From positions 166,904,001 to 166,968,000 of the forward strand of contig NW_027362764.1 in the NCBI RefSeq assembly GCF_046119375.1: a stretch of 64,000 bases of DNA, in the 5' to 3' direction. The stretch is from Phyllobates terribilis (lineage: Eukaryota). The translations under genes and the position numbers were made by a program. Below are positions 2,496 to 62,176 of this stretch, piece after piece (the stretch's first letter is position 1; every line of letters begins with the position of its first letter). A model generated the notes under the pieces. That model was not told where the DNA came from, ran no database searches, and saw only the letters and a list, made by a program, of their open reading frames with translations.

Positions 2496-3480
2496 GCATT
2501 AGTACAGAGAGTGTTGCCAATGCTGTGTAATATTTTCATATGCATGAATACACAGACTGCTATAATGCATGCTCTATGCCCCTGAACATAAATTTATTTT
2601 TATGCCCACCATGACACATACTCACAAAGTCATTAAGAAGTTTACTAAAAAATCTCAAAATGCTATAATCTATACTAATCAACACCTGGACTGCTACCTG
2701 TGTCCTCTACAAGCTATAACATGCATCCATATATTAGATACCATATGAATGCATACCATGACAATGTCCAATGTAACATATGAGTTCTGCATTAATGCAT
2801 CTATGGTTAGAAATATTATATATGACATATGCCTGAGGTATGAGTACACATACTACCATACATTCCCTATACACTATATGTTTAATGCATAAAAACATAT
2901 TTATATTAATGCAATAACAATACATTCTGTATTATATTATATATCTACTATGGATTTATACATTACATAGATTGTTTCCAGGACCATTTACTAGCCAAGC
3001 CTTGTTCCCATACTACTGCCATACACAACCATATTCCTAGACTACTATGCAATATCAAATACTATGAAAATTCCATAGATATAACACATCATGATACAAA
3101 CCAGGATCCATTCATCTATAAAAAAATACTTTAAATAACCCCTTACTTAATGATGCCCACCGAATTTACACCGAATATTGCATTTCTCCTATTATATACT
3201 AGCCCACGCCCACAGAGCTGTAAAATGCTTTACTATATCCCCTCAATGGTGATCATGGCTCCATGTCTATGCATTGTGAGCCGCCATTGCCCTGCAAACA
3301 TCAATGATTCAGCGTCCATGCCAGGGCACAAACTTTCTTTCCATTTATGTTGTATTCTGAGATATAACCTGACACTTAGAAGCCTGATGAGTCTTAGTCT
3401 CCAGCAGCAGCACTCAGTGCACATTACAAGACCCTTCCTTGCTCGCCTCCATAGCTCATCAATGATTGCAGTAGACTTAC

Positions 3481-4030
3481 TTGGGTCAATAGGAGGTTTT
3501 TCCCCATTTGTTAGGTTCTCTCCAGTATTGGCAGCAAAGGCAGCGTCGTTACTTTGCTTCTCTCTGTCAGCAGGAGAGCCACAAGCATAATCAGACAAAG
3601 ACAGAGTGTGAGCATCAAACGTGGTACAGTCCCCCCTCCTGCCTGAGAGAGGCTCAGGTTTAATACCGTAGTGCCTGCTTGAGGATAAGCCTGGGAACGA
3701 CAATGATCCGGCCATGGGCTCCAGCCAGGAGCGCATATACCTGCCATCTGAGGCTGCTATGGGTGCCTGGTGGTGCACATAAGGGTGGTACACGCTGGAG
3801 ACATTACTGGCAGGCTGAGGATGGTGCACTGGATTCCAGGGGCTGCTAAACATGGACGATTTAGATTGAAAGCTGCATGGAGTGTACTCAGGGTGTTCAG
3901 TCCCCAGTGCAGCCTGTCTTGTTGGTTGAGCTAAGGAGCCAGAAGCAAACCTGGACTGCACCAGCTCCTCACCCTCATGGATCAGGAACGAGTCCACATA
4001 ATAATTGCTCAGAGTCCCAGAAGTCGTCAT
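3481..4030 (-). CDS. HOXA9: Homeobox protein Hox-A9, coding exon 1
   Basis: ATG at 4030 gives MTTSGTLSNYYVDSFL...DGRYMRSWLEP...YGIKPEPL...EKPPIDP. Donor A|GTAAGT at 3481/3480, phase 1. 550 nt + 239 nt of exon 2 = 789 nt, 262 aa. Confidence 0.97.
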
Positions 4031-4144
4031 TGCTATGATGAGAGCAGGACCTGCTGAAATTATGAAACTGCAGATTTCATGTAACAACTTGGTCCTACAA
4101 AGAAGTACAGTCACCTAATAAGTTGCAGGCAGGACTGGCCTCCT

Positions 4145-9872: not shown

Positions 9873-10740
9873 CTGAACCAACAAAATAAAACGAGATTAT
9901 ATATTTTCAAGCTTATGATTGTTCTTGCCTTATCTTTGTTATCAATTTATATTTTATTTATATACTACATTTATATGTACAGCTTTCTGTTTTATAATAG
10001 GGGATTTCAATATTGCATTTTTTGTTAATATCATACAATTAGTATAGGTAACAGCATTCATACATTTGCAAAATCCAGTATGTTTATTAGTTTTGTTTGA
10101 TACTACTGATACTAGTNNNNNNNNNNNNNNNNNNNNNNNNNNNNNNNNNNNNNNNNNNNNNNNNNNNNNNNNNNNNNNNNNNNNNNNNNNNNNNNNNNNN
10201 NNNNNNNNNNNNNNNNNNNNNNNNNNNNNNNNNNNNNNNNNNNNNAAATATAACTTTCTATGCATCATATTTCTCTTCTTAATAATGATTTACCCCGCAT
10301 TTATCCATAATTCCATAATTTGTGAGCCTGATAGTTGGAACTGATAGAAAAGTAGTGGTTCCCCTGCTAGAATAGAGACCCCAGGCTAGAGGCATTGATG
10401 CAAGGCATTGTGCTATGTGAGCAGAAGGCAGCGCCACACATTTAGTTATCACACTTGTAACCTGGGATATTTACTGTCATATTTTGCTATGTTCTGGCGC
10501 CTGTAATGGGCCCTATAAATAGTGTTATTTTATAGGGGCTTCCTGCTTCCTCCAAGACAAAGCACAGAGGAGCAGCATGTGGTGTAAAGTTGAGAATGGA
10601 CATGATGTTTATGACAGACTCACGCCCAATTATTAAATAGTTCAAAGGCTGATAATAAAGAGGAGCTTCCTCTGTAATTTTGGTGTAGTGCCCCTGCCCT
10701 TTGTGGTGTGATTGCAGAGTGAGTGTGAGTGAGAGCTCAC

Positions 10741-11548
10741 CTCCGGGTTCTTTCTCTGGGGAGTGTTTGCTGCAGTCAGAAGGAGCCGGAGAGGAATCCT
10801 CAGCCCCGGATGAAGACGTGTGCGCCTCCTCATCTGCTCTGTGCTGGGCGGCGGCACTGGGGAGTTTGGCAGGGGGCGACTCCTCGCTGTCTTTCCTGCC
10901 ATGCTCTTCGGACATTGATGACAAGGATAAAGGCTGCTCAAACCGAACTTGGGGCTGTGGAGCAAATTGGGGAGCAGCAATGTGCGCAGCGCTATAACCC
11001 TTGGAGGAGCCATAAGCCTGGGAGAGGCGGAAGTACCCTGGCACTGGAACAGAGCTGGTATTATGAGCAGGGCTACTTTCAGAGTTAACCCTTTGAAAAG
11101 TGGACAAGTCAGTTGGAGAAGAAGTCTTAGTACATTTGTCCGAGTCATAGAGGCAATAGGAATTCTCCTCCTTAATGTTCTGTGTGAAAGAGCAAGAGGT
11201 GGCAGCTTGGCTTTCAGATTGCTCCACTCTGCAGGACCTGGAGGCTTCTAGCCAGACATCCATCCCTGGAGCATAGCCTTGAGATATGGGGACTGTGTTA
11301 CTGGGGGGAACACCTTCATTTCTTTTGCTCAAAACGGGAAAAAGTCCACAGCTCTGCAACCCATAAGACACCTCGGAAGTCTGTGGCAGGTAGACCCCTG
11401 TGCTTTGGTAGTAGCCTCCAGCTTCTGTTCCTCTGCCAGCACTGATTAAGGAGTCCACCAGGAAGGAGTTCGCAGTCGGGTTCTCCGAGCATGACATTGT
11501 TGTGGGGTAATTTGGCGAAGAGAGCAGATATTCCTTTCTGGCTGACAT
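10741..11548 (-). CDS. HOXA10: Homeobox protein Hox-A10, coding exon 1
   Basis: MSARKEYLLSSPNYPTTMSCSENPTANSFLVDSLIS...NIKEE...VPVPGYFRLSQAY. Second Met at 11497. Donor G|GTGAG at 10741/10740, phase 1. 808 + 275 nt = 360 aa. Confidence 0.96.
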
Positions 11549-20055: not shown

Positions 20056-20787
20056 TTTCAAGTAATTACAAGTATTGTTGTAGAGCATTGATACATACTA
20101 CAGTATTCAACTACTTTTTTTTTTCTTAATAAATGGAAACATGAACAAGAAAAATAACAAATACAAAAGCAACATTAGAAATATATTTGGAAAACAGCGT
20201 AAAGTACAATTGAAGGAATCATCTATGTGTTACCCCTTCAGCTGGGTATATCCTATCACCCACCACCATATTTAAGTCCACAAATTCCAAGCCTTGCTCC
20301 ATGAAATCAATGCCACAGTGCTGGCTGGTATTTGGCACCCTGCATTAGTGTGCTTGATGCCCATCGCACATTGTTTTGTCGCACATTGTTTTGCCGCATG
20401 CCCCAGCAACACCTGTGTGTCTATCTTTGCTCTCATTGTGGCAGGGAATTCCTGCTGGCAGACCATGATATTAAGCCATGCAGGGTTACTCTGTAATTTT
20501 ATTGGAGCACATTCTTTACTCACTATATTCTCTACAAACCGACCTCAGAGTTTTAAAAGGGGAAAAGGGGGAAGGATTGTCTTAAGGCATCTATTGGTCG
20601 CTGCTATTTCACGGCCAATTTCAGTGCTAAACACGTGATCTTGCCTTTTATAAGAAAGTTTTGTTGAGGGAAATCTAAAGGCCTCCATAAAGCTTATACG
20701 CTTATAAAACAGCATATAAAAGTTTAACAGCGCTGCGCTAGATACAGGCGGTGCGACAGGCAAGGCAGGCGCTGCTCTCATACGTAC

Positions 20788-21409
20788 TGGACACATTGGC
20801 TTTGTCCTCATTGTTGCCGGAAGATGAGTGGGAGCTGCTGTGGCTGCTGCTGCTCTCCGTCCTCCTCTCCTTCTCTTCTGTCTCCCTGCAGGGCTCCGAA
20901 CTTGAAGTTGTGGCAGAGGCTCCTGGCATTTTGTCGCAGTGTTTGTCCACAGAATAATCCGAGGGTTGCTGGCTGCTATTATCCGGGCTGCCATAGGCAG
21001 TCTCAAAGAACTGATCAAAGGCTTGTGGTAGCACCCCATTCCTGCCCACAGTGCTGTAGAAATTGGAGGGCACGTTGGCATTTGGGTGGTAGACATTCGC
21101 GCTGTTTCCCATGGCAGTTGTGCCCGTGCAGTCTCTGTGCATAATGTCATCAGCTGAGTAGCAGTGGGGCAGATTGCTCCTGGGGTGCCACTTAGATGAA
21201 GTGTCAATGGCATACTCCCTGAAGGTAACCTCTCTCACTGGCTGCACCTGGGCTAGGTTGGAGGAGTAGGAGTAGGGCATTGGACGAGAAGATGGGGTCT
21301 GGGGTAAAAAGGAAGGAAGGCTGGAGAAATCAGGACCCGAGACGTAGTAAGTGCAACTTGGCAAGTACATGTTAGAGGAACAAGGAACACGCTCATCAAA
21401 ATCCATCAT
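20788..21409 (-). CDS. HOXA11: Homeobox protein Hox-A11, coding exon 1
   Basis: [44 protein letters not shown]...[25 protein letters not shown]. Donor A|GTACGT at 20788/20787, phase 1. 622 + 233 nt = 284 aa. The start could be the second Met (21406). Confidence 0.96.
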
Positions 21410-21556
21410 TAGGCTACCTCGGGCTGTCCGCATTAGCTGAGCTTAACATGATTCTCTAATGCAGCTGCCTCTTTGAAGCAGATCCGTGAAGTAGAAATTT
21501 GAAGACGTAAGCTGACGTGGAGATCTATCCCCATCCTTAAGCAGGGAGGTGCTGGT

Positions 21557-31067: not shown

Positions 31068-32034
31068 CTGAAAGGGAAAGCACAGGTCACTGAGATATGA
31101 TGCTGCCTGACATCAACACAGTCATGCATGAAGTTATATACATTGTACGTAGAAAAATGTATGCTGCATTTAAATGTATGTAAATCTATCTATCTGCATT
31201 AGTGTGGGTGTATGTAAATGTGTGTGTGTTTTTGTGTCTCTCTATATATTATAAGTATATTATGTATATATATACAATTTTTATATCACTCAATAAAACA
31301 AATATGTTATGTATCAACAATATTAATCTGTAGCAGAATATGAGCTAAAATTGCATATGCAGTGGAAAAGGGAAACTGCATAACTTAAATTGTTCATTGT
31401 TCAACATTTATATATAGATAGATAGATAGATTTTTCTCTCTCTCTATATACACATATATATATATAAATATATATTCACAATGATCTCATGCACATAAAA
31501 TTATGTGTATCTGTATATACATATATTTCTACAAAGATGTAAATGCAGAAAAATATTATTGTTTATATATGACATCATTGTGAATATATTATATAACATT
31601 ATATGGTGATTTATAATAAACGGGAAATAGATAGATGATAGACATCAAATTTCAAATTATATCATGTCTTTTATTTTTTTTTTGTGTGTAATATAAAATG
31701 CATGTAGGATACAAATCAGGATAAATAAGATATAGATGCTGTTGGTAGAAAAAAAAGGAAAGAAATAGAGAGAGAAAGAAAAATATGATAGATTGATAAT
31801 NNNNNNNNNNNNNNNNNNNNNNNNNNNNNNNNNNNNNNNNNNNNNNNNNNNNNNNNNNNNNNNNNNNNNNNNNNNNNNNNNNNNNNNNNNNNNNNNNNNN
31901 NNNNNNNNNNNNNNNNNNNNNNNNNNNNNNNNNNNNNNNNAAATAGATATGATAGACAGATATGATAGATAATATTGATTGCAAATAAAAGGAATACATT
32001 CTGCATTAAAGAATATAATTATTTGATGTGTTAC

Positions 32035-32686
32035 CCGGTAAAGTGGATTTCCATAGGTGGGTTGGCTGGCTTTGATCCTTGGCACAGTAAACCTGCCCAT
32101 TCCAGCCATTTGTAATAGCCCAGGGTTGGTAGCTATCCATTGACAGTAATGGTTCATGCCTCGGTTCACCAGGTGCCCCAATGGTGGACACTACAGGCAT
32201 ATCCAGATAGCCTGGTACTGGCTGGTAAGGGGCTGTGGCATATCCCTGGTAAAAAGCAAACTCCTTGGCCCTAGAAGGAAAGTCTTCTCCAGCAGAGACT
32301 GATGTCTCCATATACTTGTCTGCAAAGGAGGAGGGCTGCGAGCAGGACTTGATGGTGCTGTGATGGCTCATTCTACAGGGGTAATAGCTGCTGCCAAAGT
32401 AGCCATAGGGCAGGCTGGCACTAGAGGAGCTCTGCACCGCAGAGCAGGGGCTGCACTGCTTGCCAGACTCCGCGATGCCCGACACTGGCACCTCACTGGA
32501 GGAGTAGGCACCGCTGGGGGCCAGAGATGCGGCAGCCGGGTGCCCCATCAGGTTCCTGCATTGGTTCGCTGCGAAGTTGCTGCCTGCGAATCCTTCCATG
32601 TTCTTATTAATATCATCCAAGCTGTTGTCGTAGAGGAACATGAGCGGCTCGGGCCAGCGGGGATGGAGCAGCACGGAGGCTGTCAT
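32035..32686 (-). CDS. HOXA13: Homeobox protein Hox-A13, coding exon 1
   Basis: [21 protein letters not shown]...AANQCRNLM...[12 protein letters not shown]...QPVPGYLD...WNGQVYC...LWKSTLP. Donor G|GTAACA at 32035/32034, phase 1. No long poly-Ala tracts. 652 + 245 nt = 298 aa. Confidence 0.96.
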
Positions 32687-32805: not shown

Positions 32806-35667
32806 ATGCAAAGCAGCTGCCAGACCCCAGAGCTGAGCTGCAGATAATTTACTTTTTTTCCTCCTTTCTTCTTCCTCTTCCCTTATATAAGTCAGCATTC
32901 AGTGCATCATCAATCCAGGCCCATATATGTATATATAGATAGATTTTTTAGACTATCGTGCAATGTTTTAATACATGATCCATTCTACAACTTTTGCACT
33001 TATCTTTCCACACGCAGGGAGGGCACCCTATGGTTATAAAATATTGCCATGGCATCATTCCTCTGCGCTCATCATTTTATTACATTAATGCGTATATAAT
33101 AACAATAATAAAACATGTCATCCAAATATAACACGCAATCCAACTTAATATATAGATGATGTGTTTATAGGGAGGAAACCCCCCAAAATATGTCACCATA
33201 ACATACAGACAGGTAAGAGAAGTAGAAATATTAAAAATTCAATTTAAAAACAAACAGCCTTTTTTTTACAATGAAAATAAGAGGTTAATGGAGAAATTAG
33301 ATTGAATGAGTTCAGGAAAAGCTAAAAAAAGACAACAACTAAAAAACAAGAAAATATGTCTCAACAAAAATATTGAGGTAATTAAACAGAATAGAAAAGG
33401 ATAGTAGAATTATCGCTTTGTATANNNNNNNNNNNNNNNNNNNNNNNNNNNNNNNNNNNNNNNNNNNNNNNNNNNNNNNNNNNNNNNNNNNNNNNNNNNN
33501 NNNNNNNNNNNNNNNNNNNNNNNNNNNNNNNNNNNNNNNNNNNNNNNNNNNNNNNNNNNNNNNNNNNNNNNNNNNNNNNNNNNNNNNNNNNNNNNNNNNN
33601 NNNNNNNNNNNNNNNNNNNNNNNNNNNNNNNNNNNNNNNNNNNNNNNNNNNNNNNNNNNNNNNNNNNNNNNNNNNNNNNNNNNNNNNNNNNNNNNNNNNN
33701 NNNNNNNNNNNNNNNNNNNNNNNNNNNNNNNNNNNNNNNNNNNNNNNNNNNNNNNNNNNNNNNNNNNNNNNNNNNNNNNNNNNNNNNNNNNNNNNNNNNN
33801 NNNNNNNNNNNNNNNNNNNNNNNNNNNNNNNNNNNNNNNNNNNCAAAACTACAACAGTACACCTTGCATTCCCTTGAAATGAATTGGGCAGATTGATTGC
33901 ACTGAATCACTGTATATTGATATCTATTTCGATTCAGATCCTTGCACAGAAAATGTAAAATAATATTCAAAAATTAAGTCGGCCTATTATTACTATGACA
34001 CATTTTCTATAAAAACAAATCTACTGGTTGGCTGCACACAATGAGGTGACTATGAGACACTACATGATAGCTGGGAGACACTGAGGATCTCTCCGAGCAC
34101 TAAGCTAATGTACCAGACACCCAGTATACACAGCACTGAGCACAGGGCAACTGTGCATAAGTGCTGAGCAGGGACACAAGCCAAGGTCAAGTTGAAAGTG
34201 CTTGTCTAGCCAAAAGTGCTCTGCCAATTAAGCCCTGGAGTCTCTTACTACCAGAAGAAGCCGTGTCCACCGAGGTCATGTACTAAAACCTCTTATATGT
34301 GATGGCGCACGGTGTGGTCATCATGTCCTAAAGTAGCAAAATACGTTCATTCATCATCACAACCCATTGAGCTGCACTTCACAAAAAGAAAAATAAGATA
34401 TAGAATCATTCTCTATATTTTATTTCTGACATGTTAAATATATGTACATACACCTATACAAAACACACACACACACACACCCACCCACACCCACCCACAC
34501 CCACACCCACACACACACACACACATATATATAGTATATATATGTACACACTCGTATATATAAACTATAAATACATATATAAAGTATATACGCATATATG
34601 TAATTATATATACGCGCACGTGTACATATTTGTATACACACATCATACACACACATATATACGATATATATTAAGCATATAGCTATAGATATAGATACAC
34701 ACATACATATATATGTACATATGTATGCACACATATGTGTGTATATTTTACAAATATACATTTGTTTTCCTAAACATCTGAGTGAAAAGCATTGGGAAAC
34801 TGAAATTTCCGTACCTGATACATTTAACAATTTGATTTGTCATTTATTGTAAATTCCAATCTACAGAAAATATGACTGGCGGACATAGAAAGACAAGCCC
34901 TACTCGGATAATGATTACCATATTCAATGAGATCATTTCTTCCCAGGGAAGTCATTAGTAACAGAGTTATGTAATGAGCAGCTGGTAAACTTTTGATATA
35001 CAAACAAATATACAATTAGCACTTTTCCATTTTTTGCACATGTCTGTGAAAAATGGAAATGTTTTCACATTATTTAAAGAATTTTTTTATTGACCAATTA
35101 AAAGACATCTTGTCACTACTTATACTTTATACTGACTATATTTCATGTCATAGTCATGGTTATTGATATTATTAGTAACAACTAAAGCAACAAAACTATT
35201 ATCTATCTATCTGTATTTTGTCTTTGGGCAGCTAATTATACTACTACTAATAATAATAATAATCATGAGCAGCATTATATTTGCATACAGTGATAACGTT
35301 TGTCATTGAATGATATATAAGTATATCAAATAATAAATCCTCAATGCAATCCTATAACATAAATACAATAAGTGTATGAGACTCTTCCCACACAATGTGT
35401 AGATTTTGTTGTTTTAAATGTTCATTTGCTCCAACATTTAGCAGCATGCATTAAGCAACTATGCCAAATCATATGCCCTTGACTGGCTGATTAATTAAAA
35501 TGTATCTTTAGGTCATAGCATATTATATAGGCCATTTATGATATCCTTGTGTAAGCAGAGTTCTCCATAATATTGTGCTGCGAGGTATTCCGTAAGGTAA
35601 AGAATATAATTAATGAAGGGGGGGAAATCTCTTTGCTTTGTACAAATGGTGTCTACACACGAGGTAA

Positions 35668-35793
35668 TTAAACAGTGTGACACTTCCCCGTTGCCCCAGA
35701 CCAGAGATTCCCACTAATATGTGTCTCTCCTTGTAGACAGCCTGCAAAACACTGGCTGCTGTGCCTGGAGCTGTACTGGTACCAGTCCGGCAT
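35668..35793 (-). pseudogene. HOXA14: HoxA14-like pseudogene exon 3 (recognition helix remnant)
   Basis: ttgtgtcttttgcacag|ATG CCG GAC TGG TAC CAG TAC = MPDWYQY. W is the fourth codon after a phase-0 acceptor, as expected for V45-K-I-W48-F-Q-N51. TGGTACCAGTAC differs from TGGTTCCAGAAC at 2 of 12 nt. Confidence 0.65.
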
Positions 35794-36431
35794 CTGTGCA
35801 AAAGACACAAGGTAAAACTTTAATATACATCTTTACTAGAAATAAATATATTCACTGTACAAAATCATGGGCTTTCCATAGACAATAGAAAAATAGCATA
35901 GTTATAGTAACTGACTATTTCGAGGTGTATTAATATATATATATACATCTCGAAATAGTCAGTATATATACATACATACACATATTTTATATACAACTAT
36001 CTATTTGTCTATCTGTATGTAATACATATATAAATATTTATATATCTATTTATATCTCTGTATATATGAAGATAGATAAATAGATATTTTACACTGATTG
36101 AAACATTTGTCAGGAATTATTCTGATCTTTCTTTCTTTTTTTCTTTCTCATCTTTTTTTTTTTCTGCCCATTTCTTATCTTCTTTCTTTTTTTTTCTGTC
36201 CCTTTATCTTTTTTTCTGCCCCTTTTCTTATCTTTCATTCTTTCTTCCTTCCTTTCTTTCTTTCTTTCCTTCTTTCTTTCCCTTTCTTATCTTNNNNNNN
36301 NNNNNNNNNNNNNNNNNNNNNNNNNNNNNNNNNNNNNNNNNNNNNNNNNNNNNNNNNNNNNNNNNNNNNNNNNNNNNNNNNNNNNNNNNNNNNNNNNNNN
36401 NNNNNNNNNNNNNNNNNNNNNNAGCACACCC

Positions 36432-36622
36432 ATTCATTCCTCTGAAGTTCAAGTTTAACAGCCATGTTTTGTCTTACCCCTGGTGTAAGGAAGTGGTTTT
36501 CTTCAAAGGCTTTTCTCCTGCTCTGCAATTTGGGACCCTTTGCTTTGTCTGGCCTGAGACGTTAGTGTTTTTGACTAGGATGGCTGGATACCTTTTGGAA
36601 ACAAAGGGCTGGGGGATCAGGA
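36432..36622 (-). pseudogene. HOXA14: HoxA14-like pseudogene exon 2 (homeodomain helices 1-2)
   Basis: Acceptor attctttcag| at 36623, phase 1. Reads QTKQRV(P)[14-nt deletion]QIAEQEK[+1 A]AFEENHFLTPGVRQNMAVKLEL[-1]E. Residues fall in homeodomain register: Q12, E15, E17, F20, N23, F25, L26, T27, R31, L38, L40. Confidence 0.88.
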
Positions 36623-38420: not shown

Positions 38421-39846
38421 GCATTGTAGAACTAGTGCAGTTGCCTAAACTTTCCACTAGATGTCTTCACAGATAATAGTATTAAATTGATTGTGTAATT
38501 AGCAGATTGGGACTTTAATATGGTGATAATGCTTTTTTTCCAATAATCTTTTCCTATAGACACTACATTCTGTCATGAAAGTTGCTGAAATGTACAAGAT
38601 ATAGCGATATATGGTATTTAGAAGGATGCAAGCTCTGTTATCACATACTATGTGCTTAAATAGCACTGCCTGCTGCATACTCCTTTTGGATTAATGTTTA
38701 ATCTGCTCAAGTCAGGGACACTCTGCTTGTAAATGCATCAACTTTGACATTCATTCTATTTTACTACTGAGGAGAGTTCAAGGTTTTGCTTTCCAGCTAA
38801 ATTCAACATTTTTGTCTGCCATTAGGGAAAGACACAAGTGTATGAACATACACATTAAATNNNNNNNNNNNNNNNNNNNNNNNNNNNNNNNNNNNNNNNN
38901 NNNNNNNNNNNNNNNNNNNNNNNNNNNNNNNNNNNNNNNNNNNNNNNNNNNNNNNNNNNNNNNNNNNNNNNNNNNNNNNNNNNNNNNNNNNNNNNNNNNN
39001 NNNNNNNNNNNNNNNNNNNNNNNNNNNNNNNNNNNNNNNNNNNNNNNNNNNNNNNNNNNNNNNNNNNNNNNNNNNNNNNNNNNNNNNNNNNNNNNNNNGC
39101 AGAAGATGGTGGTTGCTATCAGATATACTTTGATCATTGGCCTTCCTACAAATACATAATTAAGGATTGCAGCGCTCCTGCATTATTCCAGTTAGTATAG
39201 ATTATTCACCCATATGCCATAGGATCTATTTTTATATGATAAAATAATTAACCAGAAAGACATTTTAAGGCCTGTTCACATCACTCTAATAGTGCTTCAT
39301 GCTTTTTTTTTCCCCACTGAACTTGATACATAGAAAGCTTACCGTTTTTAACAGCATGGGTTTAGAAAACTTGTAATATTGGATCCTGATACAAATGGTG
39401 ACAACTATATTAAGAATATTTTTTACACCTCATATCAATGATTGAGATGCATTAATATTGTTTAGAGAACATACCTGTCAGAGTAACCAGGGAGAGCTGT
39501 CACCAACCTGTTCTCTAAGGGAATAATGACATCTCAGAATCCATTACGAACCAAAAGTGGCAAAAACGCCCGTTTTTTTTATATAACTAATACAAAGTTT
39601 TTCTGTCCTTTGGGGTTTGTGTCTATTTAAATCAATGGGAGGATCAGATGGAAAGGATATGTCTCTGTAACCAGATAACCCAGACTGATCGGAATCGCTC
39701 TTTCTATTATTACTTTTGAGTGACAGCCATTTTAAGGGATTAAATATCTAATGAATTAAAAATATAATTTGCTAATAATGTTTATCCATATATTATATAT
39801 CCTTTATCTATATAAAATATAGTTATATTATATTTATATACACACA

Positions 39847-60358: not shown

Positions 60359-62176
60359 TTAAAAACGTGGTTCTGTGTGGAAGATTTTAAAGCAGTCAGT
60401 GACGCATAAGGCTGGCAATGATGGGCATTGTGGGCAATAGTAGCGGGTATCACGCCTCATTCCTCTCTTAGTACATACCCGACATCTTTTCTGGGGGTTC
60501 CTTCTTGTTTCCGTTGCTGGAATAAGTGCAATAAAATGTCGCTCAGTGAGTCTTTTCACATCCTCAGATTCTAATGGATGAGCGGGGCTAACACTTTGAA
60601 AGACAAGATTTTCAATTACCTTTTCTTGATAATCAAGAAAAGGATCTGAATTTCCTGCTTTTTTGTACAACACAAAAGAATTGTATGTGGCCACCTGAAA
60701 CAAATAAATAACCAACTTTTTATACCAGGTATAGGACTTTCTTGATACCTGGTATGGCTGTAGCACCTGGTCTGCAAGGTCCACACCCCCCATGTGTTTG
60801 TTGTAGTCAATGACTGACACAGGTTTTTGCTTCGGAGTGGTGGATCCTAGTTCTACAGTGGCCCTTGTGGCATCTGTGTGGATCGAGCTGAGGACAAAAA
60901 TATCCCTCTTATCCCTATATTTCAGGGCAAGCAGCTCTCCGTTGCGTACAGCCCCTGACTGCCCCTTTTGAAACTTTTGGTTGACCAATGGTTGTGGAAA
61001 CCCCTGACGGTTTTTACGGATGGTCCCACAAGCCCCGATGTTGTGTTCAACCAGACTTTTAAATAGGGGTATGCTGGTGTAATAATTGTCCACATATAGA
61101 TTGTAGCCTTTTTGAAAAAATGGACTTATCAGCTCCCAAACAATTTTTCCAGATGTCCCCAGATAAGTAGGGCATCCTGGTGGGTTTAGTTGGCTATCTT
61201 TCCCCTCATATATGCGAAAAGCGGATGTGTATCCGGTTGAACTTTCGCACATTTTATAGAGCTTTATTCCAAACCTTGCCCTTTTAGATGGGATAAATTG
61301 CTTGAGGTGCAGTCTTCCTTTGAATTTTACACGGGACTCGTCTATAGAAATATTTTGTGTTGGGGTGTAGAGGCTTAAGAATTTTTCTGACAAATTTTCA
61401 ATGATGGGTCTAATTTTATATAACCTGTCATGTTCTGGGGCATTTCTGGGCAGGCATTGACTATTGTCGTTAAAATGCCAAAACCGCATGAGCATTTCAT
61501 AACGGGTCCTAGGCAGAATGACTGAAAACATAGGGGTGGCTTGAACAGGGTGGTTGGACCAGTAGGATCGAATGCTCGGTTTTTTAACAAGCCCCATGGC
61601 AAATGTAAGTCCTAAAAATTTTTTTATTTCCGGGACATTAGTTGGTGTCCATAAATTTGCCCTAGCATAGTAAGATCGGGGATTCTGGCTTATGAATTGG
61701 GACGCGTATAAATTTGTTTGCACGACAATATGCTCTAGCAAGCTGTCTGTAAAAAACAAATTAAAAAAATGAACTGGTCCAAAATCTTCCACCTCCACAT
61801 TTATACCAGGAATGGCGTTGAAATCAGGGCTGAATGGAGCAGCCGAATCTGAAGCCTCCCATCTGGGAAATGCTATATCACGTGGCAACGCCCCTTGTAC
61901 ACTGGCGTGCGCCAATTCACTAGTAGCAGGGACAGCGCTTGTACTGGGCAGTGTTCCCTGATTTGGAGACGTTTCTCCAGTAGCGCTATTTGCCCCTATT
62001 GCTCTACTGGTCCTTGGGCTTGAGGATGGAACAGAATCACTGCTCATTTCTGGGCTCTCAGTGTCGCCGCTACTAAAGCCCTCAAAATCCATATCTCCAT
62101 CTGAGATTGCGCTGTCATCAGTGTCAGAACACAGCAGGGCATACACCTCCTCTGCGGTATAAGTCTGACGGGCCAT
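60359..62176 (-). CDS. piggyBac transposase (PGBD4-like), 605 aa, uninterrupted
   Basis: Catalytic motifs SIDES, YVDNYYTS and GGVDLADQ. C-terminal Cys/His-rich domain CRVC...YCPQCPSLPALCVTDCFKIFH. Start context aaaATGg. Confidence 0.93.
   Translation of the reverse strand: MARQTYTAEEVYALLCSDTDDSAISDGDMDFEGFSSGDTESPEMSSDSVPSSSPRTSRAIGANSATGETSPNQGTLPSTSAVPATSELAHASVQGALPRDIAFPRWEASDSAAPFSPDFNAIPGINVEVEDFGPVHFFNLFFTDSLLEHIVVQTNLYASQFISQNPRSYYARANLWTPTNVPEIKKFLGLTFAMGLVKKPSIRSYWSNHPVQATPMFSVILPRTRYEMLMRFWHFNDNSQCLPRNAPEHDRLYKIRPIIENLSEKFLSLYTPTQNISIDESRVKFKGRLHLKQFIPSKRARFGIKLYKMCESSTGYTSAFRIYEGKDSQLNPPGCPTYLGTSGKIVWELISPFFQKGYNLYVDNYYTSIPLFKSLVEHNIGACGTIRKNRQGFPQPLVNQKFQKGQSGAVRNGELLALKYRDKRDIFVLSSIHTDATRATVELGSTTPKQKPVSVIDYNKHMGGVDLADQVLQPYQVSRKSYTWYKKLVIYLFQVATYNSFVLYKKAGNSDPFLDYQEKVIENLVFQSVSPAHPLESEDVKRLTERHFIALIPATETRRNPQKRCRVCTKRGMRRDTRYYCPQCPSLPALCVTDCFKIFHTEPRF

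What the first reader, a model, noticed from the sequence alone, without database searches (positions are those of the whole stretch)
35668..35810. Separate recognition-helix exon: the Hox14-diagnostic split homeobox
Seen in sequence: about 640 nt downstream of the exon-2 remnant, a clean pyrimidine tract and CAG acceptor (35794) is followed in phase 0 by ATG CCG GAC TGG TAC CAG TAC (MPDWYQY), placing W at codon 4. Established knowledge: vertebrate Hox14 genes have an extra intron between homeodomain codons 44 and 45, so their last exon starts V-K-I-W-F-Q-N; Hox9-13 lack it, as the four intact genes here show. Inference: this is exon 3, and it supports the PG14 identity independently of amino-acid similarity. 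The frame stays open for 41 codons, but similarity after codon 51 is poor.
Basis: partly seen in the sequence, partly recalled or inferred. Interest (0 to 1): 0.8.

Follow-up and report, generated by a model that had tools for sequence, protein, structure and literature searches.

The report
Fossil last exon of frog HoxA14
This stretch is the decayed third exon (the DNA-reading helix) of a dead HoxA14 gene lying just upstream of HoxA13 in a frog. It shows that frogs, like turtles and crocodilians, still carry the wreck of a Hox gene once thought to have vanished from land vertebrates.

Summary
The letters are as described: on the minus strand a pyrimidine tract and CAG (35794-35796), then ATG CCG GAC TGG TAC CAG TAC from 35793, open for 41 codons to TAA at 35668-35670.

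Taken alone, the match to the Hox14 helix (W, Y, Q) is no better than chance. 29 other 16-residue stretches in the same 10 kb score as well.

Seven other frogs fetched here settle it.
- The AG is invariant.
- The spacing to a downstream conserved core is fixed at 112-122 nt.
- Slower lineages keep much more: Ascaphus reads IKIWYHHQSQKQEE, Pelodytes RYQNRL*KKK, and Xenopus tropicalis VQKRLQNR.
- These compare with the invariant Hox14 VKIWFQNQRQKEKK.

A snapping turtle has [13 protein letters not shown] after CATAG. In Ascaphus, turtle and X. tropicalis the exon-2 remnant ends at homeodomain codon 44, followed by GT.

A 2024 paper already reports intact Hoxa14 in caecilians and pseudogenes in turtles and crocodilians, but not in frogs. 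This is a new member of a known kind.

The helix codons drift almost neutrally. Strong frog-wide constraint starts in the tail codons and runs about 250 nt further, probably regulatory DNA.

This scan had already noted the exon-2 remnant on this same window.

The parts
35794..35820 (-). 3' end of intron 2: pyrimidine-rich tract and CAG acceptor
   Evidence: Sequence. The AG is invariant in 8 frogs and the turtle.
35746..35793 (-). Remnant of homeodomain codons 45-60 (recognition helix). It reads MPDWYQYSSRHSSQCF against Hox14 VKIWFQNQRQKEKKLL.
   Evidence: Orthologous to Ascaphus IKIWYHHQSQKQEERL and turtle [15 protein letters not shown]. Mean identity across deep frog pairs is only 0.47.
35701..35745 (-). 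Remnant of the C-terminal tail codons. 35701-35703 (TGG) aligns with the stop codon of the Ascaphus copy.
   Evidence: Alignments. The tail pattern Q-x-x-G-x-S-x-x-V-T is shared by lungfish, turtle and Ascaphus. Identity across deep frog pairs is 0.69.
35668..35670 (-). TAA that closes the window's own 41-codon open frame. It lies inside the conserved TTTAATTA core.
35464..35745 (.). Frog-wide conserved non-coding element covering the exon-3 tail and about 250 nt beyond.
   Evidence: Blocks are conserved with Xenopus, Ascaphus, Spea and Pelodytes. 59 of 100 columns are invariant in 8 frogs at 35594-35693. It was not found in the turtle.
36433..36561 (-). Exon-2 remnant (homeodomain up to codon 44). 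It reads ...KAFEENHFLTPGVRQNMAVKLELQRNE.
   Evidence: tblastn with coelacanth HoxA14 gives E 9e-8. Covered by the scan's earlier finding s1-230033.
36423..36432 (-). Start of intron 2: TGG then GTGTGC, running into the gap.
   Evidence: Other frogs have GTGAGT, GTACAC, GTTGTT or GTGCAC here.
32006..32686 (-). Hoxa13 exon 1, the downstream neighbour on the same strand.
   Evidence: 97% identical to Rhinoderma darwinii Hox-A13.

Best explanation
Positions 35701-35793 on the minus strand are what is left of exon 3 of HoxA14. This is the short last exon that in all Hox14 genes begins at homeodomain codon 45 (VKIWFQNQRQKEKK...) after a phase-0 intron. The gene is dead in frogs. In this hyloid only W48, Y49 (for F) and Q50 survive, and exon 2 carries frameshifts. 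The helix-coding part now drifts at close to the neutral rate. It is still recognisable because it is wedged between a conserved acceptor site and a strongly constrained element. That element starts in the old tail codons and runs about 250 nt further, into what would have been the start of the 3' UTR. I infer that this element, not the helix remnant, is what selection keeps. It most likely acts as cis-regulatory DNA for the posterior HoxA genes. Shown here: the origin as HoxA14 exon 3, the 44/45 split, the pseudogene state, and the conservation profile. Inferred: the regulatory role of the adjoining element.
For: The stretch lies 3 kb upstream of Hoxa13 on the same strand. True Hox14 proteins were recovered, and LTERQ|VKIWFQNQRQKEKKL is invariant across lungfish, coelacanth, sharks, sturgeon, lamprey and hagfish. 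The orthologous sites in 7 other frogs share the AG acceptor and sit 112-122 nt from the core GTCACACTGTTTAATT. Ascaphus reads CAG|IKIWYHHQSQKQEERLCLQSEG.., rank 1 of 19,906, and aligns with lungfish and coelacanth HoxA14. Pelodytes ranks 5 of 19,906. X. tropicalis keeps V45, Q50 and N51. Parsimony at the frog root, with the turtle as outgroup, gives unambiguous I W Y Q N Q. Q.. K.. L. The turtle copy has exon 2 ...GLTKRQ|GTAATA, an intron of 1155 nt, then CATAG|[10 protein letters not shown]. The Ascaphus exon 2 ends ...LPERH|GTACAC and meets the Pfam Homeodomain threshold. For the conservation profile, identity across deep frog pairs is 0.32 in the intron, 0.47 in the helix codons, 0.69 in the tail and 0.77 in the next 100 nt.
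Against: The window's own copy is statistically indistinguishable from chance, so its identity rests wholly on orthology. No coelacanth, lungfish or caecilian DNA could be fetched for a nucleotide-level comparison. No RNA data could be laid, so a surviving non-coding transcript is not excluded. The regulatory role of the adjoining element is untested. The element is absent, or unrecognisable, in the turtle.
Confidence: 0.88

Rival explanations
1. The W-Y-Q match is a coincidence. The stretch is just the 5' edge of a frog conserved non-coding element that never was a Hox14 exon.
For: The window's peptide scores no better than 29 other 16-mers in the same 10 kb, and its nucleotide identity to the turtle exon is 17/48. 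Conservation among frogs is concentrated downstream of the helix codons.
Against: The same aligned site reads IKIWYHHQSQKQEE in Ascaphus and RYQNRL*KKK in Pelodytes. It follows an invariant AG. It lies 290-1160 nt downstream of an exon-2 remnant that stops at codon 44 before GT. The turtle has a near-intact exon 3 in the same arrangement.
Confidence: 0.04
2. The remnant exons are still transcribed and spliced as a non-coding RNA. On this reading the conserved acceptor and the conserved tail/3'UTR block are kept for the RNA, not as enhancer DNA.
For: The AG acceptor is invariant in 9 species, although the surrounding 20 nt are only 0.40 identical. GT is kept at the exon-2 end in most species. 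Small libraries from several organisms hold part of 35300-36290. A weak HOTTIP_2-like hit nearby shows that lncRNA-type conservation exists in this interval.
Against: No read evidence could be obtained. The consensus fold of the conserved block is weak, at -14 kcal/mol with 4 compensatory pairs. X. laevis has GC instead of GT at the donor. Two invariant columns are only mild evidence.
Confidence: 0.2
3. The exon still codes for protein, as a functional or truncated HoxA14 in frogs.
For: The frame is open for 41 codons in the window.
Against: N51, essential for DNA binding, is Y in the window and H in Ascaphus. There are stops at homeodomain codon 12 (Ascaphus) and codon 54 (Pelodytes). Frameshifts occur in helix 1 of hyloids and pipids. 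No tetrapod protein appeared among the Hox14 homologues.
Confidence: 0.01

Closest known systems
Pseudo-Hoxa14 of turtles and crocodilians (Mol Biol Evol 2024, PMC11600591)
   Same: Both are decayed HoxA14 exons upstream of Hoxa13 in a tetrapod, with premature stops and frameshifts. I re-found the snapping-turtle copy independently: exon 2 at L007 3007-3141 and exon 3 from 4297, with TAG at homeodomain codon 52.
   Different: The frog copies are much more eroded, especially in hyloids. Frogs were not reported to carry remnants in that paper, although X. tropicalis was in its species set. Frogs also have a strongly conserved element fused to the exon-3 tail that the turtle lacks.
Intact HoxA14 of lungfishes, coelacanth and caecilians
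   Same: Same place in the cluster, the same three-exon plan with the intron after homeodomain codon 44, and the same exon-2 signature ELEKAFEENRFLTP.
   Different: Those genes are open and keep the invariant VKIWFQNQRQKEKKL. The frog sequence keeps 2 identical residues of those first 16 and cannot encode a homeodomain.
Elephant-shark HoxA14 and HoxB14 pseudogenes (review PMC3707753)
   Same: PG14 genes that decayed in place while the rest of the cluster stayed intact.
   Different: A different lineage and an independent loss. No sequence comparison was made here.

Membership tests
Vertebrate Hox paralogue group 14 (HoxA14), as a pseudogene | Lies 5' of Hox13 in the cluster, on the same strand, towards Evx | tested here: met
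   It is 3.0 kb upstream of the Hoxa13 start codon on the minus strand, like Hoxa9, a10, a11 and a13. Evx1 itself was not seen within the window.
Vertebrate Hox paralogue group 14 (HoxA14), as a pseudogene | Second intron splits the homeobox between codons 44 and 45, and the last exon starts VKIWFQN | tested here: met
   Exon 2 ends at codon 44 before GT in Ascaphus, turtle and X. tropicalis. An invariant AG precedes the codon-45 equivalent in 9 species. In the window the donor side abuts the N gap.
Vertebrate Hox paralogue group 14 (HoxA14), as a pseudogene | Recognition-helix motif WFQNQR, with Q at position 52 (PMC3509897) | tested here: inconclusive
   The window reads WYQYSS, so the motif is lost. 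Ascaphus keeps Q52 (WYHHQS), the turtle has TAG, one step from CAG, and parsimony gives WYQNQ at the frog root.
Vertebrate Hox paralogue group 14 (HoxA14), as a pseudogene | Exon-2 homeodomain closest to Hox14 rather than Hox9-13 | tested here: met
   The exhaustive search returned lungfish HoxA14 at 74% identity as the only close hit. On the Hox14 exon-2 profile, Ascaphus scores 59.8 bits against about 42 bits for Hoxa13. The window against coelacanth gives E 9e-8.
Functional Hox14 gene | Uninterrupted reading frame with W48, F49, N51 and R53 intact | tested here: not met
   N51 and R53 are replaced in the window. Stops and frameshifts occur in every frog examined.

The most novel reading that the evidence does not exclude
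[quoted passage not shown] No stop or frameshift in the homeobox is shared by Ascaphus, pipids, pelobatoids and hyloids. W48, Q50, N51 and Q52 reconstruct as intact at the frog root. Meanwhile its tail and 3'UTR were taken over as a frog-wide regulatory element, or remain part of a spliced non-coding RNA.
Probability: 0.3. Interest if true: 0.55.

Novelty: new member of a known kind. Interest (0 to 1): 0.4.

Why it matters
[quoted passage not shown] A 2024 paper overturned that for caecilians (intact gene) and for turtles and crocodilians (pseudogenes).

Finding all the homeobox parts of the wreck across frogs, from Ascaphus to hyloids, adds the largest amphibian order to that picture. It dates the loss to after the split from caecilians. 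It also gives a series of independently decaying copies for timing the loss.

The remnant marks a strongly conserved 280-nt element next to Hoxa13. This element is a concrete candidate regulator, testable in Xenopus.

Tried and rejected
- **Pfam on the window's pieces:** no hit on either the exon-2 or the exon-3 piece. The Ascaphus exon-3 piece also had no hit.
- **Hox14 exon-3 profile:** frogs score about 0 bits or below, and only the turtle scores well.
- **tblastn with lungfish and coelacanth HoxA14:** it finds exon 3 only in Ascaphus and the turtle, not in the window.
- **Exon 1:** a profile of sarcopterygian HoxA14 exon 1 found nothing significant in any frog or the turtle. The proposed exon-1 remnant is therefore unverified here, although the block 38435-38819 is conserved among frogs.
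- **Other DNA look-ups:** coelacanth HoxA14 DNA was not on record. Manta ray, Gastrophryne and Discoglossus files were too large.
- **RNA evidence:** the runs found are small libraries of guessed type.
- **Frog conserved element against the turtle:** local alignment was no better than shuffles.
- **Rfam:** nothing on the exon itself.
- **Consensus RNA fold of the conserved element:** weak.
- **Sturgeon 483-aa protein:** I considered it as a possible Hox14 fusion, but it joins Hoxa13 and Hoxa11 parts instead.

Full report
**Setting.** The window holds a frog HoxA cluster on the minus strand.
- Exon-1 reading frames of Hoxa9 (3233-4114), a10 (about 10487-11548), a11 (20738-21433) and a13 (32006-32686) are present.
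- The a13 exon is 97% identical to Rhinoderma darwinii Hox-A13 and 95% to Dendropsophus, so the animal is a hyloid frog.
- The finding lies 3 kb upstream of the a13 start, which is where a Hox14 gene would sit.

**The observation.**
- The minus strand reads ttttaccttgtgtcttttgcacag, then ATG CCG GAC TGG TAC CAG TAC from 35793.
- The frame stays open for 41 codons, to TAA at 35670-35668.
- The exon-2 remnant (...KAFEENHFLTPGVRQNMAVKLELQRNE) ends 639 nt upstream and runs into the N gap.
- The homeoboxes of the four intact Hox genes are unsplit.

**Is it more than chance?** On this sequence alone it is not.
- Against the invariant Hox14 peptide, the first 16 residues score 13 (BLOSUM62). 29 of 19,906 other 16-mers in the same 10 kb score as well.
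- Identity to the turtle exon 3 is 17/48, which is unremarkable.
- Pfam, tblastn and a Hox14 exon-3 profile do not see it.

**Bringing in relatives.** I used Hoxa13 proteins as handles and fetched 10 kb upstream of Hoxa13 in eight species:
- Rhinoderma (L001), Dendropsophus (L002) and Xenopus laevis (L003);
- Ascaphus truei (L004), Spea (L005) and X. tropicalis (L006);
- the snapping turtle Chelydra (L007) and Pelodytes (L008).

All frogs share collinear conserved blocks, including the exon-2 remnant and a block just 3' of the proposed exon-3 start.

**A true Hox14 for comparison.**
- The Ascaphus exon-2 piece reads IAELEKAFEEKHFLTPGQRQIIALKLALPERH. It meets the Pfam Homeodomain threshold.
- An exhaustive search of 1.8 billion proteins with this piece returned only two hits. 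One is an unrelated moth protein at 39% identity.
- The other is a 228-residue lungfish protein, 74% identical. It is auto-named Hox-B9a-like, lies on the lungfish Hoxa13 chromosome and carries WFQNQR.
- WFQNQR is the PG14 hallmark cited in PMC3509897.
- Searching with that lungfish protein gave Neoceratodus HoxA14, coelacanth, shark and ray, sturgeon, lamprey and hagfish Hox14.
- In their alignment [20 protein letters not shown] is invariant. No tetrapod protein appeared.

**The exon-3 site across species**. After an AG that is invariant in all nine species:

| Species | First residues after the AG |
|---|---|
| Turtle (Chelydra) | [15 protein letters not shown] |
| Ascaphus | IKIWYHHQSQKQEERL |
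| Pelodytes | LRNRYQNRL*KKKASL |
| X. tropicalis | VQKRLQNRTWSRSNVC |
| X. laevis | LQKRHQNRSWSSGNVC |
| Spea | MDTSAQTYCKQKEACL |
| Hyloids (window and Rhinoderma; Dendropsophus differs at two residues) | MPDWYQYSSRHSSQCF |

- Ascaphus ranks 1 of 19,906 and Pelodytes 5 of 19,906 in their own 10 kb.
- Ascaphus and the turtle are also found by tblastn with lungfish and coelacanth HoxA14. The similarity continues into the tail, with the pattern Q-x-x-G-x-S-x-x-V-T.
- Orthology with the window is anchored by the AG and by a fixed distance of 112-122 nt to the invariant core GTCACACTGTTTAATT.
- Fitch parsimony at the frog root, with the turtle as outgroup, gives unambiguous I W Y Q N Q. Q.. K.. 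L.

**The split.** Exon 2 ends at homeodomain codon 44, followed by GT:
- Ascaphus: ...CCA GAA AGA CAC|GTACAC;
- turtle: ...AAG CGA CAG|GTAATA;
- X. tropicalis: ...GAG AGC CAG|GTTGTT;
- X. laevis: GC at this site;
- Rhinoderma and Dendropsophus: a GTGAGT close by.

Intron 2 is about 290-1160 nt long. This is the PG14 intron position described in PMC3707753.

**State of the gene.** It is dead in every frog examined.
- Ascaphus has TAA at codon 12 and WYHH in place of WFQN.
- Pipids have a deletion in helix 1.
- Hyloids have a 1-nt insertion in helix 1 and further losses.
- Pelodytes has a 4-nt deletion near codon 43 and TAA at codon 54.

I saw no disabling lesion in the homeobox that all frogs share. 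Several replacements at otherwise invariant positions are shared across frog lineages: T/S9N by all, E29G and F49Y by Ascaphus and hyloids among others, T41P by Ascaphus and Xenopus. Two scenarios therefore remain open. Either constraint was relaxed on the frog stem, with the first hit elsewhere in the gene, or the losses were independent.

**What is kept, and why**. Mean identity over deep frog pairs, by segment:

| Segment | Window coordinates | Mean identity |
|---|---|---|
| Distal intron 2 | 35854-35943 | 0.32 |
| Around the acceptor | 35794-35853 | 0.40-0.42 |
| Helix codons | 35746-35793 | 0.47 |
| Tail codons | 35694-35745 | 0.69 |
| Next 100 nt | 35594-35693 | 0.77 (59 of 100 columns invariant) |
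| Following 130 nt | 35464-35593 | 0.67 |
| Beyond | 35314-35463 | 0.44 |

- The helix remnant is close to neutral drift. Selection acts on the element that begins in the old tail.
- This element is rich in TAATTA, ACAAAG and CATAAA motifs.
- It has only a weak consensus RNA fold and is not recognisable in the turtle.
- I infer cis-regulatory DNA for posterior HoxA genes. A surviving spliced non-coding RNA is the main alternative.

**What is known.**
- Older literature states that HoxA14 was lost in all tetrapods (PMC3038165, PMC3707753, PMC7875771).
- PMC11600591 (2024) reports intact Hoxa14 in four caecilians and pseudo-Hoxa14 in turtles and crocodilians. X. tropicalis was in its species set, but no frog remnant is mentioned.
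- I found no paper reporting frog remnants.

**Verdict.** The proof comes from other frogs and the turtle, not from this decayed copy. It is a new member of a known kind and of moderate interest.

Noticed in passing
window 34144-34278 (+): There is a weak Rfam match to HOTTIP conserved region 2 (26.4 bits, E 8e-5, far below the gathering score of 80). It is on the strand opposite the Hox genes and coincides with a block conserved in all frogs and in the turtle, about 1.5 kb upstream of Hoxa13.
   Followed up: partly
window 35464-35745: A frog-wide conserved element is fused to the HoxA14 exon-3 tail, with invariant cores such as GTCACACTGTTTAATT and CCATTTGTACA. Small libraries from several organisms hold part of it. 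This might mean it is a capture target or is transcribed. Not resolved.
   Followed up: partly
L007 3007-3141 and 4297-4392 (Chelydra serpentina): The turtle HoxA14 pseudogene is very well preserved. Exon 2 is open across the homeodomain, and exon 3 reads VKIWFQN then TAG at codon 52. This agrees with PMC11600591.
   Followed up: yes
L004 5243-5377 and 6222-6317 (Ascaphus truei): This is the best-preserved frog HoxA14 remnant. Within the homeobox it has a single in-frame TAA at homeodomain codon 12, and clean GT and AG intron ends.
   Followed up: yes
window 38435-38819 (-): This block is conserved in all frogs and was proposed elsewhere in the scan as the exon-1 remnant. A profile of lungfish and coelacanth HoxA14 exon 1 gives no significant match there.
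   Followed up: partly
window 60359-62176 (-): An intact 605-residue piggyBac-type transposase reading frame (Pfam DDE_Tnp_1_7, E 1e-89, plus its zinc finger) lies upstream of the cluster.
   Followed up: partly
protein P0150 (Protopterus annectens XP_043922143.1): The lungfish HoxA14 is auto-named 'Hox-B9a-like' in the public record. Many shark Hox14 proteins likewise carry misleading automatic names.
   Followed up: yes
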